Source: Ranitomeya imitator
Taxonomy: Eukaryota
Assembly: GCF_032444005.1 (NCBI RefSeq)
Contig: NC_091283.1
Coordinates: 627,998,001-628,062,000 of the forward strand
Length of the DNA: 64,000 nucleotides
Direction: 5' to 3'
Positions 57,593 through 64,000 of this stretch are shown here, one piece after another. The notes beneath the pieces are model-generated. The model was not told the DNA's origin, made no database searches, and saw only the letters and a program-made list of their open reading frames with translations. The position numbers were made by a program, and so were the translations under genes. The first letter of the stretch is position 1; each line of letters opens with the position of its first letter.

Positions 57593-58045
57593 CTAAGAAC
57601 GTGCCTCTGTTTTAGACTTCACTATGGTAATGACACTAGTGGCAGCTACTTTCCCTGGTATAAGAGGCCTCATGCCAGGTGTATATGCCCCCCTCGGAGG
57701 GTTGATGGGATTCCTCGCTACAGTCCTGGCAAAGTTCTGCAGGGCTTCATACTTTGACCTTAGAGAGTCCAGCTCTTGGCGCATGCTAGCATTCTCAGAG
57801 GCGAGCTTCTCCACCTCCTGCTGCAATTCTGCCTTCTGCTTCTCCAGTTCTTCTTTTTGCGTTACCCGCTTTACCCTGCAGCTTGCAGCATAGCCACGGT
57901 TCTTTAGCGTACGTCGTCGTTGCTTCAGCTGGATGATCTCCTCCTTGGTCAAACCACGGAGATGCTGGTTCAGCTCCCGCACAGACATGGTGACCAATTC
58001 TTCATCCGTAAGACTGGTTCCATTCTCCCCGGGCTCCCTCTTTAC
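57593..58045 (-). CDS. MAFG: MAFG last coding exon (extended homology region, basic region, leucine zipper)
   Basis: Acceptor catttag|; TAG at 57593-57595; VKRE sumoylation-type motif at the exon start. Confidence 0.96.
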
Positions 58046-59477
58046 CTAAATGTAAAGCAGAAAAATAGTACAAATCGCACCAGAAAGATGCACACTAACG
58101 CTTGTCAAAGGTTTGATGTCCTAATATGCCATGTGATGGATGGTATTTATGGAAGTATTCATGCCCCTTAGTGGGTACACATCATCTTCATTGTGTTACC
58201 GGAGATCAAACTCCTCACAAGGCAAACGTCATCGTGAGGTTGTGTGAACTGACCCAACATCAAGGATGAAATGCCAGAAAACTACCAAATCAAGGGGACA
58301 GAAATAGTGAATCTATTGACAAGTCATTAAAACAGCAATGTTAGATGAAGGAAAAAAGATGGTTAGGGACAACTATACAATCTGGGGGCTTCTGTCATGA
58401 TCCCAATGGCAGGGGATCACAAAAGGACAAGCACAAAAACAAAACAAGCTCTAGGGTGATGGAACCTGAGCTGACCGCGATCCTGAACCTAAACACACAA
58501 CTAGCAGTAGCCGGGGAACGTGCCTACGATGATTCCTAGACGTCTCGCGCCAGCCGAAGGATTAACTTCCCCTATTAGAAGAAACACAGACCTCACTTGC
58601 CTCCAGAGAAACACCCCACAGAAATAGCAGCCCCTCACACGCAATAACGGTGAAACGAGAGAAAAGCACATACGCAGTTATGAAAACAGAATCAGCAAAA
58701 ATGAGGCCCGCTAAAGCTAGATAGCAGAGGATACAAAAGTGAACTGCGCGGTCAGCGAAAAACCCTTCAAAAAACCATCCTGAAATTACTTGAACTCATG
58801 TGCCAACTCATGGAACATGAGGAGTAATTTCAGCCCACTAGAGCAACCAGCAGCAAGGAATCACATATCTGCAAGCTGGACTAAGACAAAAATAAAGCAA
58901 AACGTGGAACAGGAAAAATCAAAACTTAGCTTGTCCTGAAGATAACAGACGCAGGGAGCAGAGGTAAAAAGACACGCTGATTACATTGATAGCCGGCGAG
59001 GAAATGACAAAAAAGCCAGGTTAAATAGGAAACTCCCATAACCTGATGGAACAGGTGGACACCAGAGACCGCAGAGAACACAAGTCACCCAGTACCATCA
59101 GTAACCACCGGAGGGAGCCCAAAAACAGAACTCACAACAGGCTTCACAGCAATTGATCCCCCATCATTCTATAAGTTATCACCACCCTGTGGAGCCAGAA
59201 TACTTTTTTAATTCTGAGGTGTGAAAGCAGCCTAAAAATTATCTTCTGGTTTAACAGCCTACTTACAATTCAGATGAATACAACTGTTGGAGACTATGGC
59301 AGCCTGGTCAACTTTAGTTTTGTGATCTCCAAGACAAAAGCTGAGAAGGCATTTGTCTTATGCACGGCACGTGGACCACCAGCAATGCATCCATGATTAG
59401 ATCCGGGGCCTACACCAAATGTAAGGGGGTGTTCTTACCTTCAGAGCTTTGCTGTTTCCCTTGCTGAGAGTCGTCAT
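57593..59477 (-). CDS. MAFG: Small Maf bZIP transcription factor MafG, 2 coding exons, 492 nt = 163 aa
   Basis: Join of 59439-59477 ([13 protein letters not shown]) and 57593-58045 ([31 protein letters not shown]...[14 protein letters not shown]...[10 protein letters not shown]). GT-AG intron. The N- and C-termini fit MafG rather than MafK or MafF. Confidence 0.96.
58393..59139. mobile_element. Solo LTR (747 bp) in MAFG intron between the two coding exons
   Basis: TG...CA ends (TGTCATGA ... TCACAACA); 6-bp TSD GGCTTC on both sides. Confidence 0.82.
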
Positions 59478-59502
59478 ACCCTGGGAACCGTGTGTCAGCA
59501 AA
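59439..59502 (-). CDS. MAFG: MAFG first coding exon (25 nt 5'UTR + 39 nt CDS, ATG at 59477)
   Basis: Acceptor ctctctgtag| at 59503; donor AAG|GTAAGA. Confidence 0.93.
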
Positions 59503-59719
59503 CTACAGAGAGAGGAAGCAATGTGTTAGTCTGACCTCGAAAACCTGGCCTCTCAGCACATCATCTCATCTGCCCCCTAACCTATTGCTGTCTATGTGTC
59601 CTGCGGTCCTGATCTCTCACCCAATTTAATAAAGATGAGGACAAAGGCAATTACAATCCCCAGTGGACTTAACTTTAAAAATAAGCTGGGAGGGAAAGAG
59701 AAGCCGAGCAGGCGAGTCA

Positions 59720-59732
59720 TGCTGAGTCAGCA
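59720..59732. promoter_or_regulatory. Perfect palindromic T-MARE (TGCTGAGTCAGCA) upstream of MAFG first coding exon
   Basis: Exact 13-bp match to the TRE-type Maf recognition element, 218 bp from the acceptor at 59503. Confidence 0.8.
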
Positions 59733-59996
59733 CAATGCTGTATCAGACAGCAGCACGCAGTATCCTGTGTGCAACCATATATATCCACAAAGACATGTAG
59801 CTGTATACACAGAGAATCGGAGCCAGAGAGAGAAAAGTGCTAGAGCTGGTCATACTAAGGCACAAAAGTCCCATGTACAGGAGCCACGTTACACGCGAAA
59901 CCAGGAATTCACATTCTCACACTGTGGTTGGTCTTTCATGAACAAATGTAGTTATGGGAACAATAATGCGTGTGCAAAAAAAAAGTCACTTACATA

Positions 59997-60205
59997 CAGT
60001 GCCTTAAAAAAGTATTCATTCCCCGTGAAGTTTTCAATATTTTTTTCAAGTTACACTCGCAAATTTAAATGTATTTTATTGGGATTTTATGCTCTTTACC
60101 AACACAAAGTAGTAAGCATTTGTGAAGTGCATGAGAAAGGATATATGGTTTTCTAATTATTTTAACAATATACAGTTAGGTCCATATATATTTGGACAAA
60201 GAAAT
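59997..60205 (+). mobile_element. Two truncated Tc1/mariner left termini
   Basis: TA|CAGTGCCTTAAAAAAGTATTC at 59997 and TA|CAGTTAGGTCCATATATATTTGG at 60173. Confidence 0.65.
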
Positions 60206-60213
60206 TCACGAAT

Positions 60214-61785
60214 TACTGGTTTTTGGTCATTCTGCCTAACAAAAATCGGAATAAAAAGCGATCAAAAAATGTCACGTGCCCGAAAATGGTACCAATAAAA
60301 ACGTCAACTCGTCCTGCAAAAAACAAGATCTCACATGACTCTGTGGACCAAAATATGGAAACATTATAGCTCTCAGAATTTGGAGACGCAAAAAATATTT
60401 TTTGCAATAAAAAGCATCTTTTAATGTGCGACAGATGCCAATCATAAAAATCCACTATAAATAGTAAATCAAACCCCCCTTCATCACCCCCTTAGTTAGG
60501 GAAAAATAATAAAATAAAAAAATGTATTTATTTCCATTTTCCCATTAGGGATAGGGTTGAGGCTAAAGTTAGGGATGGGGTTTGGATTACGTTTACAGTT
60601 GGGTTAGGGGTGTGTTGGGGTTAGGGGTGTGGTTAGGGTTGGAGTTAGAATTGGGGGGTTTCCACTGTTTAGGGACATCAGGGGCTTTGCAAATGCAACA
60701 TGACGTCCGATCTCAATTCTAGCCAATTCTGTGTTGAAAAAGTAAAACGGTGATCATTCCCTTCGGAGCTCTGCCATGCGCCCAAACAGTGGTTTACCCC
60801 CACATATGGGGTATCAGCGCAGTCAGGACAAGTTGGACAACAACTTTTGGGGTACAATTTCTCCTCTTACACTCGGGAAAATACAAAACTGGGGGCTAAA
60901 AAATAATTTTTTGGGGAAAGTTTTTATTCCAAAATTGTGCTGATGTAAAGTAGTCATGTGGGAAATGTTACTTATTAAGTATTTTCTGCGACATATCTCT
61001 GTGATTTAAGGGCATGAAAATTTAAAGTTGGAAAATAGTGAAATTTTCAAAATGTTTGCCAAATTTCTGTTTTTTTCCCAGAAATAAACGCAAGTAATGT
61101 CAAGGAAATTTTACCACTATCATAAAGTACAATATGTCACGAGAAAACAATGTCAGAATCACTAGGATCCGTTGAAGCGTTCCAGAGTTATAACCTCATA
61201 AAGGGACAGTGGTCAGAATTGTAAAAATTGGCCCGGTCATTAACGCCTTGGGGGTTAAAGAGAACCTGTCACCCCCCCCAAATCCAAGATGAGCTAAGCC
61301 CACCGGCATCAGGGGCTTATCTACAGCATTCTGTAATGCTGTAGATAAGCTCCCGATGTTACCTGAAAGATGAGAAAAAGAGGTTAGATTATACTCACCC
61401 AGGGGCGGTCCCGCTGTGGTCCGTGTCCGATGAGCGTCCGGTCCGGAGCCTCCCATCTTCTTAAGATCACGCCCTCTTGTCTTCATGATGCAGCCGCGAT
61501 TCCGGCGCAGGCGTACTTTATCTCCCTGTTGAGGGCAGACAAAGTACGCCTGCGCCGGAGCATGAAGACAAGAAGAGGACGTGATCGTAAAAAGATGGGA
61601 GGCCCCGGACCGCGACGCCCATCGGATCGGACCGCCTGCGTGAGTATAATCTAACCTCTTTTTCTCATCTTTCAGGTTAAATCAGGGGCTTATCTACAGC
61701 ATTCCAGAATGCTGTAGATAAGCCCCTGATGCCGGTGGGCTTAGCTCACCTTCCATTTTGGGGGTGATAGGTTCCCTTTAAGGGG
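60214..61785. mobile_element. Truncated, inverted copy of the piggyBac-like family, with a TTAGGG-like tract and a MITE in its terminus
   Basis: Reverse-complement similarity to 48132-48500 and 49600-49850; TTAGGG-like tract ~60540-60655; ends TTAAGGGG|TTAA. Confidence 0.75.
61259..61777. mobile_element. Kolobok/T2-type near-palindromic MITE (519 bp)
   Basis: TTAA TSD (61255-61258, 61778-61781); TIR AG(A/G)GAACCT(G/A)TCACCCCC with arms of >200 bp. Confidence 0.9.
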
Positions 61786-61789
61786 TTAA

Positions 61790-61950
61790 TGGTTGTCTGA
61801 GGAATGTTCTGCTGCACTGAATGAATTTTGGCACATCATCAAGATCCGCTGCTGGCAGCTTCCTCTGCAATTGCTGACTAATGATGTCCCATATGTGCTT
61901 GATGGGAGACAAGTCTGGAGACGCTGCAGGCCATGGTGGCACCTATAGGC
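61790..61950 (-). mobile_element. Tc1 transposase C-terminal fragment
   Basis: Minus strand reads PWPAASPDLSPIKHIWDII. Confidence 0.75.
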
Positions 61951-62146
61951 TGCTCACAGTACTAGGACCAACATGCGCCTGACCTCGTGGTGCTGACAGA
62001 GCCCCCGGGACACTTTGGACCTATGTATAACCATGAGACATGGCAGCCGACCTCTGTATGGACACAAGTCCCATCAGGAAGCGTCTGACAGGATGGACGG
62101 CAGCGCTATACAGGCGGCACCTCACACAAGGAATGAGTAGTGAGAT

Positions 62147-62161
62147 AGCGCCATCTAGCGG
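62147..62161 (-). promoter_or_regulatory. CTCF-like motif CCGCTAGATGGCGCT
   Basis: Close match to the CTCF core consensus; motif only. Confidence 0.4.
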
Positions 62162-62249
62162 GACACAGTCACTGTGCAGCAGCATCATGACAGCGCATCT
62201 GTGCAGCACCTACGTCACATATACCGGAAAATCTGCACTATCCCTGCAC

Positions 62250-62960
62250 GTCACGGCCGGGGGGAGGGGCACAACTGTCAGCCTTGGGGTCGAGGTTGTG
62301 CTGGGACTTGTGGTGATCCGGGGGCAGCTCATGGCCTGTAGGGCTTTTTCCCCTGCTCACAGCTGGCTGTTTGCTACAGCAGCACCATGTCCGGCCAGTC
62401 TGCTGCCATGTGCCTGTACGCGGCTCATTGTCTCAGAGACGCCAAAGTTTGGCCCAGATGCAGCAGCTGAGGTGAGGTGGGTGTCAGCCCCGGGGGGCAC
62501 AGAACACCGGCTCACTGCCCACCACACTGCCCACAGCCAGGACACCGGGCGGCCGGAGCCTCCAGCAGGCACCTGCCCCAGCCCCAAACCACCTGTCAAT
62601 CACAACTCCGCCCCTTCGTCTTCCTCATGACATCACGGCAGCAGTGACGTAACAGCTCGCATAACAGGGGCGTCCGCGGTGACCGAGCGCTGCCGGGGGA
62701 TCACGTGACGCGGCTCCGGGATCGATGACCCCTCACTTCGGTCCTCGGCGCTGGATCCTTGGTAGATGCCTGAGCACAGGGGGTTAAAGGACCTTTGTTG
62801 ATGTCATGGCCATGTGATCAGTCACATGTGGGGGAGGAGTCAGGCGCTGGGCTGTTCTGGGTAGGGGAAGCGCAGACCTGTGTGCCGGGGAGCAGGGGGC
62901 TGAGGCACAAAGTAGGGGGCTGTCTGCTCCGCACATAGCACTTAAAGGGGTAGTCACAAA
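62250..62960 (-). promoter_or_regulatory. Probable MAFG CpG-island promoter with a non-coding first exon (boundaries uncertain)
   Basis: GC/CpG-rich; GC box 62606-62614; TGACATCA 62628-62635; TGACGTAA 62645-62652; E-box CACGTG 62702-62707; candidate donors GCA|GTGAGC (62515) and GAA|GTGAGG (62736). Confidence 0.55.
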
Positions 62961-63639
62961 TGGGACCTAACACTTAAAGGGGTATTCCCAGAATTCACAA
63001 ATAGGACCATTTAAAGGGGTATTCTTAAATAGGATCTAACACTTAAAGGGTATGTCCAGAATTGAAAGTTGTCTATAGCCAAGGTACTGATCACTGCCCC
63101 CCAGCAGATCTGAGAGTGTGGAAGGCAAACATTGGTGCCCCCCACTCCAGTAAGGCCAGGTCCTGCAGAGCCCGCTTCCCAGGGACCCCCAGTGATCTCC
63201 ATATCCCGTGGGGAGACAAATAGGAACAGTGGCAGGAGGAGGCCCAGAGAAGCGCCATGGGGCAGCGCCAGTAACAAACCTGCCTCACCCGGGCAGGAGG
63301 TAACACACAGGCCCTGGTCCGATTCACACCACAATATTGGCAGAAAACCATAAATATTTGTGCAACATAAAATTGTGCGAAACCGTTGTGATTTCTGGAG
63401 CGGTCACTTTTCGGCAGATGGGGATGAGTCGTGGCTGCGCGATGTCGGCATCGGTATCACCAGAAATGTTACTCCAGTCCCCGACTGTCCCGGCTGAGAA
63501 CAAGCAGGTACCCACAGGACGCCGACACCCCACGCCCGTCGGCACGTCCTCTCCGCTACTGAATGCTCCTTGTCACAGAAGAACAGGAATTCTTGGTTTC
63601 CTCCTAACTCATCGGCCCCGACACTTTGTTTGAATGTGA

Positions 63640-64000
63640 CCTGGTTAATTATAACGGACCCCCCTGATCTACTGCTGATCTCTGACACCAATATGGTATT
63701 AGCTCTTCGATGACTGCACTAGCCCAAGGATTTTGGCCCACTCCTCCATCCAGATCTTCTAGGTTTTGGGGCTGTCACAGGGAAATATTGAGTTTCTGCT
63801 CCCACCAAAGATTTTCTATTGGGTTCAGGTCTGGAGACTGATTAGGCCACACCAGTACCGTGACATGCTTCATACGCAGCCACATCTTAGTTGCCCGGGC
63901 TGTGTGTTTCAGGTCATTATGCTGGAAGACCCAGTTATGACCCATCTTCAATGCTCTTACTGAGGGAAAGAGGTTGTTGGCCAAAATCTTGTGATACATG
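63640..64000 (-). mobile_element. Tc1 transposase fragment (runs off the window end)
   Basis: [17 protein letters not shown]...[15 protein letters not shown] in ORF 63775..63999. Confidence 0.85.

What the first reader, a model, noticed from the sequence alone, without database searches (positions are those of the whole stretch)
59712..59732. Perfect palindromic Maf recognition element inside MAFG: candidate autoregulatory switch
Seen: TGCTGAGTCAGCA at 59720-59732, 218 bp from the acceptor of MAFG's first coding exon, in unique sequence. It abuts a second TRE-like half site (minus strand TGCTGACTCAGCA-TGACTCGC). A uniform-base calculation expects about 0.002 such 13-mers per 64 kb. Established: this is the T-MARE consensus bound by Maf homodimers; NRF2-small Maf heterodimers prefer the asymmetric RTGACnnnGC form; mammalian MafG is known to be NRF2-inducible via an ARE near an alternative first exon. 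Inference: a fully palindromic site would favour MafG homodimer binding and hence negative autoregulation. It may also serve an alternative first exon (candidate donor TGG|GTGAGA near 59620).
Basis: partly seen in the sequence, partly recalled or inferred. Interest (0 to 1): 0.72.

Follow-up and report, generated by a model that had tools for sequence, protein, structure and literature searches.

The report
Conserved Maf site at MAFG's internal promoter
The perfect Maf-binding palindrome inside this frog's MAFG gene is real and has been kept almost unchanged in frogs, a turtle and a hamster, but it is most likely the frog copy of a feedback element already described in mouse and human MAFG, so it is solid rather than new.

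Summary
TGCTGAGTCAGCA lies at 59720-59732, is the only copy in the window (about 0.02 expected), and sits in single-copy DNA 218 bp upstream of the acceptor of MAFG's first coding exon (minus strand).

It is not a chance site. The same 13-mer lies 255-366 bp upstream of the start codon in four other frog families and a turtle. A hamster has TGCTGAGTCAGCG at 377 bp. In all seven species it is followed by TGAC and, 45-65 bp later, by an invariant ATTTTTAAAG.

In a third hyloid frog, complete mRNA contigs from four runs start just 3' of the site and splice to exon 2. The block therefore heads an alternative first exon. In this species only the upstream CpG-rich exon 1a was seen spliced.

Mammalian MAFG is already known to carry an NRF2/small-Maf-bound ARE at an alternative first exon. 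A 2026 preprint reports a canonical MARE near the end of human intron 1 and proposes MAFG self-regulation.

My verdict is a frog orthologue of a known feedback element. Interest is low to moderate.

The parts
59720..59732 (.). Palindromic T-MARE. It reads TGCTGAGTCAGCA on + and TGCTGACTCAGCA on the gene strand.
   Evidence: Searches give an exact, single match with 0.02 expected. It is identical in 4 other frogs and a turtle, and 12/13 in hamster.
59713..59719 (-). Abutting TRE-like site TGACTCG. Its centre is 10 bp from the MARE centre.
   Evidence: TGAC is invariant in all 7 tetrapods. TGACTCGCC is shared by 4 of the 5 frogs (Hyperolius differs by one base) and hamster.
59673..59684 (-). A/T-rich element TTATTTTTAAAG. 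It fits a TATA-like box, and its reverse complement TTAAAAATAR fits the MEF2 consensus YTAWWWWTAR.
   Evidence: ATTTTTAAAG is invariant in all 7 tetrapod sequences, 45-65 bp downstream of the MARE. Naming it TATA or MEF2 is inference.
59582..59713 (-). Inferred alternative non-coding first exon 1b. The 5' end is not mapped. The donor is CAATAG|GT at 59582|59581.
   Evidence: It is homologous to the 5' 144 nt of complete spliced mRNA contigs L008-L011 of another hyloid frog and to the Bufo gargarizans isoform X1 first exon. It was not seen in the four runs laid on this window.
59503..59581 (-). Inferred 79-nt intron between exon 1b and exon 2.
   Evidence: Searches show a gap in the transcript-genome alignment, flanked by GT..AG in the window.
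59439..59502 (-). MAFG exon 2, the first coding exon, with ATG at 59477-59475.
57593..58045 (-). MAFG exon 3 coding part, including the stop codon.
   Evidence: It is 99% identical to Dendrobates tinctorius MafG.
62593..62781 (-). MAFG exon 1a, non-coding, in a CpG-rich promoter. The donor is GACAG|GT at 62593|62592.
   Evidence: A contig of run X2 (272 nt) covers 62781-62593 with no mismatches, and its remainder fits exon 2 plus the start of exon 3. The region is conserved with Bufo and Gastrophryne. The junction matches the N-terminus MIDS|LLTHG of P0004. GC is 0.64 and CpG o/e is 0.59.

Best explanation
The 13-mer is a functional, deeply conserved binding site for Maf-family bZIP dimers. 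It sits at the head of an internal, alternative promoter and first exon (1b) of MAFG, in the last 220-260 bp of intron 1. It belongs to a small module made of the T-MARE, an abutting TRE-like TGACTCG in 10-bp phase, and an invariant A/T-rich element about 50 bp downstream. Small-Maf homodimers lack an activation domain and repress. CNC-small-Maf heterodimers either activate (NRF2, NRF1, NRF3) or repress (BACH1). These complexes compete for the site, so transcription of MAFG from this promoter depends on the ratio of CNC partners to small Maf protein. That makes a feedback loop on MAFG dosage: activating when NRF2 rises and self-limiting when MafG is in excess. Shown here: the site, its conservation, and its position next to a transcribed, spliced alternative first exon in frogs. 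Taken from the literature on mammals: occupancy and NRF2 dependence. Inferred: the same occupancy in frogs, and the sign of the feedback.
For: The site is exact and statistically unexpected. The same 13-mer is the only such match in the MAFG loci of Dendrobates, Bufo, Hyperolius, Gastrophryne and Pelodiscus, at 255-366 bp from the exon-2 ATG. Hamster has a 12/13 match at 377 bp. A snake model starting MLSQHD implies the same DNA. Invariant alignment columns cluster in TGCTGA.TCAGC.TGAC and ATTTTTAAAG. Between hyloid and ranoid frogs, only the exon-1a promoter, this block and exon 2 remain alignable 5' of the coding sequence. Complete mRNA contigs from four runs of another frog begin 3 nt after TGACTC and splice to exon 2. 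Gene models in Bufo, Gastrophryne and hamster start in or at this block. From the literature: MARE and ARE definitions and homodimers as repressors (PMC3488259); both dimer types bind both kinds of element and compete (PMC9756947); mafG has an ARE upstream of exon Ic, conserved between mouse and human and bound by NRF2 and small Mafs (review PMC9287733 citing Katsuoka 2005); a canonical MARE lies near the end of human MAFG intron 1 and MAFG self-regulation has been proposed (bioRxiv 10.64898/2026.05.26.724922).
Against: There are no binding or expression data for any frog. In this species the four runs laid show no contig over 59676-60069, and only exon 1a is seen spliced to exon 2; contigs drop rare isoforms, so this is a weak negative. 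The transcription start of exon 1b is unmapped. Two frog contigs include the A/T-rich element, so it is not a classical -30 TATA box for all transcripts. I could not read the primary paper. Hamster and turtle also carry asymmetric NF-E2/ARE-type sites (TGCTGASTCAT) in the upstream GC-rich promoter region, so the published ARE may be one of those instead.
Confidence: 0.8

Rival explanations
1. One reading: the site is mainly a negative autoregulatory switch. Its full palindrome is there to recruit MafG (small Maf) homodimers, which shut the promoter when MafG is abundant.
For: Both GC boxes, including the C 5' of each TGA that disfavours CNC partners, are invariant in 7 tetrapods. The extra amniote sites upstream are asymmetric CNC-sMaf type. 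MARE-like motifs with bilateral GC boxes mark MafG-only ChIP sites (PMC3488259). The homodimer binds MAREs better than Nrf2-MafG does (PMC9756947). MAFG knockout lowers methylation around the human intron-1 MARE (preprint).
Against: In frogs it is the only TGASTCA-core site 5' of exon 2, so any NRF2 input would have to use it. Per the review, the mammalian evidence is for NRF2-dependent activation. Heterodimers also bind palindromic MAREs. Nothing tested here gives the sign of regulation.
Confidence: 0.25
2. It is a target of large Maf activators (MafB, c-Maf, MafA, NRL), whose consensus is the same palindromic T-MARE. On this reading it drives tissue-specific MAFG expression and is not feedback.
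For: The sequence equals the T-MARE consensus. Selection on both half-sites fits any Maf:Maf dimer.
Against: No evidence was found in the literature searched. Small Mafs are far more broadly expressed (general knowledge).
Confidence: 0.1
3. It is an AP-1 (Jun/Fos) tandem TRE that gives MAFG an immediate-early or stress response independent of Maf proteins.
For: The core TGACTCA plus a second TGACTCG 10 bp away resemble tandem TREs.
Against: Selection extends to the flanking TGC/GCA bases, which AP-1 does not read. Jun-Fos bound such an element about 200-fold more weakly than the Nrf2-MafG heterodimer or the MafG homodimer (PMC9756947).
Confidence: 0.07
4. It is a chance palindrome with no function.
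For: None beyond the fact that short motifs do occur by chance.
Against: The window expectation is 0.02. An exact or 12/13 match at the same place in six other tetrapod loci has odds of about 6e-5 per species for a 500-bp interval by a uniform-base calculation.
Confidence: 0.01

Closest known systems
Mouse/human mafG ARE (Katsuoka, Motohashi, Engel, Yamamoto, J Biol Chem 2005;280:4483), as summarised in PMC9287733
   Same: A CNC/small-Maf site in MAFG's own 5' region, next to an alternative first exon and conserved between species. It is said to be bound by NRF2 and small Mafs and to give an autoregulatory loop. In hamster, the block orthologous to the frog site lies just upstream of the alternative first exon nearest exon II. 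That matches 'upstream of exon Ic'.
   Different: Identity with the published site is not proven. The paper was not available, and hamster has two further ARE-type sites 3.1 kb upstream. The frog site is a full palindrome, and the hamster copy ends in G.
Canonical MARE near the end of human MAFG intron 1 (bioRxiv 10.64898/2026.05.26.724922)
   Same: Same gene, same part of intron 1 and same consensus. It carries the same proposal that MAFG regulates itself negatively.
   Different: That work is on human cancer cells, its read-out is DNA methylation, and the motif was found in silico only. I did not fetch human sequence, so orthology is inferred from position and from the hamster and turtle copies.
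Tandem NF-E2/AP-1 sites of the beta-globin LCR HS2 (from memory, not tested)
   Same: Two TGASTCA-type cores spaced 10 bp apart and bound by CNC-small-Maf dimers.
   Different: The HS2 sites are asymmetric NF-E2 sites in a distal enhancer. Here the first site is a palindromic MARE, the second is imperfect, and the location is promoter-proximal.

Membership tests
T-MARE (Maf recognition element, TGCTGA(C/G)TCAGCA) | 13-bp palindrome with a TRE core and a GC box on both flanks | tested here: met
   Exact match at 59720-59732. The consensus is as given in PMC3488259.
T-MARE (Maf recognition element, TGCTGA(C/G)TCAGCA) | Occupied by Maf dimers in vivo | not testable with these tools
   No frog ChIP data are available. 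Mammalian occupancy is known only from literature summaries.
CsMBE / ARE (RTGA(C/G)nnnGC, CNC-small-Maf heterodimer element) | Core TGACnnnGC | tested here: met
   TGACTCAGC on the minus strand at 59721-59729. The same core is read on both strands of the palindrome.
CsMBE / ARE (RTGA(C/G)nnnGC, CNC-small-Maf heterodimer element) | A or G immediately 5' of TGA on the CNC side | tested here: not met
   C lies on both sides (TGC-TGA) in all seven species. The site is MARE-type, not heterodimer-oriented (criterion from PMC3488259 and PMC9756947).
Orthologue of the mammalian MAFG intron-1 MARE/ARE | Same sequence at the same position relative to exon 2, with shared flanks | tested here: met
   Hamster and turtle carry the motif plus TGAC plus ATTTTTAAAG at 377 and 366 bp from the ATG. 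The hamster locus is the true MAFG locus, with SIRT7 downstream.
Orthologue of the mammalian MAFG intron-1 MARE/ARE | Is the very site tested by Katsuoka et al. 2005 | tested here: inconclusive
   The primary paper is not held. The review says 'upstream of exon Ic'. Three candidate sites exist in hamster.
Alternative first exon / internal promoter | Transcripts that begin here and splice to exon 2 | tested here: inconclusive
   Met in another hyloid frog (4 complete mRNA contigs) and in the Bufo gene model. Not seen in this species in 4 runs. The start site is unmapped.
TATA box or MEF2 site (the A/T-rich element) | Consensus match and position about -30 from a start site (TATA), or YTAWWWWTAR (MEF2) | tested here: inconclusive
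   The sequence fits both consensus forms and is invariant. Two transcript contigs contain it, which argues against a simple -30 TATA.

The most novel reading that the evidence does not exclude
Tetrapod MAFG has kept both Maf half-sites of a palindromic MARE (12 of the 13 bases invariant, only the outermost base changed in hamster) at its internal promoter for about 350 My. Amniotes placed asymmetric, NRF2-type sites elsewhere in the gene. The palindrome would then be a dedicated sensor of small-Maf dosage, giving homodimer-mediated self-repression that is separable from NRF2 induction. In frogs, which lack the upstream sites, the one element would do both jobs.
Probability: 0.3. Interest if true: 0.5.

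Novelty: already known. Interest (0 to 1): 0.3.

Why it matters
Small Maf dosage decides whether MARE/ARE-dependent genes are activated or repressed, so how MAFG sets its own level is a real question in the NRF2 field. The frog site adds comparative weight. The element, its abutting half-site and an A/T-rich partner are under strong purifying selection across tetrapods, and both GC boxes are constrained. That points to a role for Maf:Maf dimers and not only NRF2-MafG. It also gives a compact module of about 70 bp for reporter and genome-editing tests. It does not reveal a new kind of mechanism.

Tried and rejected
- **Primary and review papers.** Katsuoka 2005 (JBC), the 2016 Gene review and the 2005 MCB paper are not held.
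- **Literature searches.** Searches for exon Ia/Ib/Ic details and for a printed mafG ARE sequence gave nothing beyond one review sentence.
- **Caecilian locus L005.** It is uninformative. Its gene model has an invented first exon, and the true exon 2 is not within 10 kb.
- **Catshark.** A 12/13 site lies 939 bp upstream of the ATG. Its flank resembles the amniote upstream NF-E2-type site more than the palindromic block, so I do not count it as an orthologue.
- **Other look-ups.** The bichir locus was too long to fetch. Two protein look-ups were not on record.
- **Blastn from frog to turtle or hamster.** It finds only exon 3. The module is too short for it and had to be found by motif and alignment.
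I rejected it as the conserved donor because related frogs read through the equivalent bases. It remains possible in dendrobatids.
- **A hairpin role for the palindrome in RNA.** I rejected this because a 6-bp stem with a 1-nt loop cannot form.

Full report
**1. The observation**

The 13-mer TGCTGAGTCAGCA is at 59720-59732. Allowing either central base, it is the only exact match in the window. Shuffles expect 0.02. With one mismatch allowed, nothing else appears.

On the gene strand it reads TGCTGACTCAGCA and runs straight into TGACTCG at 59719-59713. The looser ARE core TGACNNNGC is not enriched in the window: 32 matches against 27.5 expected. The signal therefore lies in the full palindrome.

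**2. Gene context**

MAFG is on the minus strand.
- Exon 3 holds residues 14-163 (58045-57596, stop to 57593).
- Exon 2 is 59502-59439, with the ATG at 59477.
- The protein is 99% identical to Dendrobates tinctorius MafG. The DNA is only 83-93% identical to that species. The window therefore comes from a related but different hyloid frog.

I laid contigs of four runs on 58100-64000.
- 58297-59281 and 60070-61842 are multi-copy repeats.
- 59282-60069, which holds the motif, has essentially no depth. That confirms it is single-copy DNA.
- One 272-nt contig of run X2 covers 62781-62593 without mismatch and stops at GACAG|GT. Its remaining 83 nt and the X2 depth over exon 2 fit exon 2 (64 nt) plus 19 nt of exon 3.

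Exon 1a therefore lies in the CpG-rich stretch 62400-62900 (GC 0.64, CpG o/e 0.59). Intron 1 is 62592-59503.

**3. Conservation**

I fetched MAFG loci through the protein hits. The exact palindrome is present once in each of the following, always on the gene strand side 5' of exon 2.

| Species | Locus | Distance from exon-2 ATG |
|---|---|---|
| Dendrobates | L001 | 255 bp |
| Bufo | L003 | 269 bp |
| Hyperolius | L004 | 283 bp |
| Gastrophryne | L002 | 289 bp |
| Pelodiscus (turtle) | L006 | 366 bp |

- The golden hamster (L007, the true locus, with SIRT7 downstream) has TGCTGAGTCAGCG at 377 bp.
- A garter-snake gene model that begins MLSQHD implies ATGCTGAGTCAGCAYGAY.
- In the seven-species alignment, invariant columns cluster in two blocks. 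One is TGCTGA.TCAGC.TGAC. The other is ATTTTTAAAG, 45-65 bp downstream.
- Between hyloid and ranoid frogs, only three things 5' of the coding sequence still align: the exon-1a promoter, this block (87% over 102 nt with Gastrophryne) and exon 2.
- A uniform-base estimate for finding TGCTGASTCAGC in a 500-bp interval is about 6e-5 per species. Chance is excluded.
- The frog-amniote split is about 350 My old (general knowledge).

**4. An alternative first exon**

Protein P0003, from RNA assemblies of a third hyloid frog, carries a 13-residue extension, MESDS-LLTHSSQG. Its four complete mRNA contigs from four runs (L008-L011) align to the window as follows.

| Transcript part | Window coordinates |
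|---|---|
| 5' segment (exon 1b) | 59713 to about 59582 |
| Gap (intron) | 59581-59503 |
| Exon 2 | 59502-59439 |
| Exon 3 | follows |

- The longest contig starts 3 nt after TGACTC. The others start 33-64 nt further in.
- The Bufo gargarizans isoform X1 (MDSKR-LLTHG) uses the same exon and donor.
- The Gastrophryne and hamster models start at ATGs that overlap the MARE or its 3' edge.
- The block therefore heads a transcribed, spliced alternative first exon (1b).
- The conserved donor corresponds to window CAATAG|GT at 59582|59581. It has a good consensus in this species and in Dendrobates, so it cannot be excluded here.
- In this window the Bufo ATG is ATA, so exon 1b would be non-coding.
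- No contig of the four runs covers exon 1b in this species. That is a weak negative, because contigs drop minor isoforms.
- The start site is unmapped. Two contigs contain the A/T-rich element, so it is not simply a -30 TATA box. Its reverse complement, TTAAAAATAR, also fits the MEF2 consensus in all seven species (inference).

**5. What is known**

- The MARE consensus is TGCTGACTCAGCA. Small-Maf homodimers lack an activation domain and are regarded as repressors.
- NRF2-MafG sites in vivo tend to have A/G 5' of TGA, which disfavours homodimers. MafG-only sites are MARE-like with two GC boxes (PMC3488259).
- Both dimer types bind both kinds of element and compete.
- The heterodimer binds MAREs more weakly than the homodimer does. 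Jun-Fos binds about 200-fold more weakly (PMC9756947).
- mafG itself is NRF2-inducible. The review PMC9287733 states that one ARE upstream of first exon Ic is conserved in mouse and human and is bound by NRF2 and small Mafs (citing Katsuoka 2005).
[quoted passage not shown] It reports that MAFG loss lowers methylation there, and it proposes self-regulation.
- By position, the frog-turtle-hamster block is this element.

One caveat remains. Hamster and turtle also have asymmetric NF-E2/ARE-type sites (TGCTGASTCAT) in the GC-rich upstream promoter region, 3.1 kb and 5.5 kb from exon 2. I could not read the primary paper. Which site Katsuoka tested is therefore not certain.

Frogs have no such upstream site within 4.5-8 kb. 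In all five frog sequences the MARE is the only TGASTCA core between the exon-1a promoter region and exon 2. Dendrobates has one more about 560 bp upstream of its MARE, and Gastrophryne has one about 4 kb upstream near the neighbouring gene.

**6. Mechanism**

The most likely mechanism is a promoter-proximal site where small-Maf homodimers and CNC-small-Maf heterodimers compete. MAFG output would then depend on the CNC:sMaf ratio.

The invariance of both GC boxes is more than an NRF2-MafG site needs. The only experimental evidence I could cite for mammals is activation by NRF2. In frogs the site probably has to serve both roles.

I put 0.8 on 'functional conserved Maf/CNC-sMaf site of the internal MAFG promoter'. 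I put about 0.25 on homodimer repression being its main role.

**7. Verdict**

It is the frog orthologue of an element, and of an autoregulatory idea, already in the literature.

New here:
- the depth and precision of the conservation;
- the three-part module;
- the link to exon 1b in frogs;
- the contrast with the asymmetric upstream sites of amniotes.

Noticed in passing
L007:5169-5310 and L006:4351-4506: The hamster and turtle MAFG loci carry extra asymmetric NF-E2/ARE-type sites (TGCTGASTCAT) in the GC-rich upstream promoter region, with the shared flank TCATCAGCATGAGGTCAC. Frogs lack them. A catshark site at L012:9062-9074 resembles this upstream site more than the palindromic MARE.
   Followed up: partly
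window 62593-62601 (minus): Exon 1a ends GTG ATT GAC AG|gt. In another frog the same codons start with ATG and give the N-terminally extended isoform [15 protein letters not shown] (P0004). Here the ATG is GTG, so no extension is expected. The exon 1b ATG of Bufo (MDSKR) is ATA here.
   Followed up: partly
window 62700-62709 (minus): GTCACGTGAT, a CLEAR/E-box-like motif (CACGTG core), lies in the exon-1a CpG-rich promoter. Mammalian long isoforms that start MNGAHVTKHHVTS imply similar CACGTGAC repeats in their upstream exon.
   Followed up: no
window 58297-59281 and 60070-61842: Intron 2 and the middle of intron 1 are filled with high-copy repeats, with thousands-fold contig depth in all four runs. 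They include a MITE-like element with 130-nt inverted arms at 61274-61403 and 61635-61764.
   Followed up: partly
window 63775-63999 (minus): A Tc1/mariner-type transposase fragment (…[15 protein letters not shown]…) lies upstream of the MAFG promoter and runs off the window end.
   Followed up: no
window 59592-59720 (minus): The ATG formed by GCATGAC at the 3' edge of the MARE opens a 42-codon ORF (MTRLLGFSFPPSLFLKL…). The ORF recurs as the start of the 'low quality' Gastrophryne MafG model (MTRLLGLSSPPSLFLKL…). It reflects DNA conservation of the promoter block, not a coding exon. It would be an upstream ORF if transcripts start 5' of the MARE.
   Followed up: partly
L005:10001-10040: The Microcaecilia 'MafG-like' model has an invented first exon (MVLRGYLCAGC). 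The real MTT… exon 2 is not within 10 kb upstream.
   Followed up: partly
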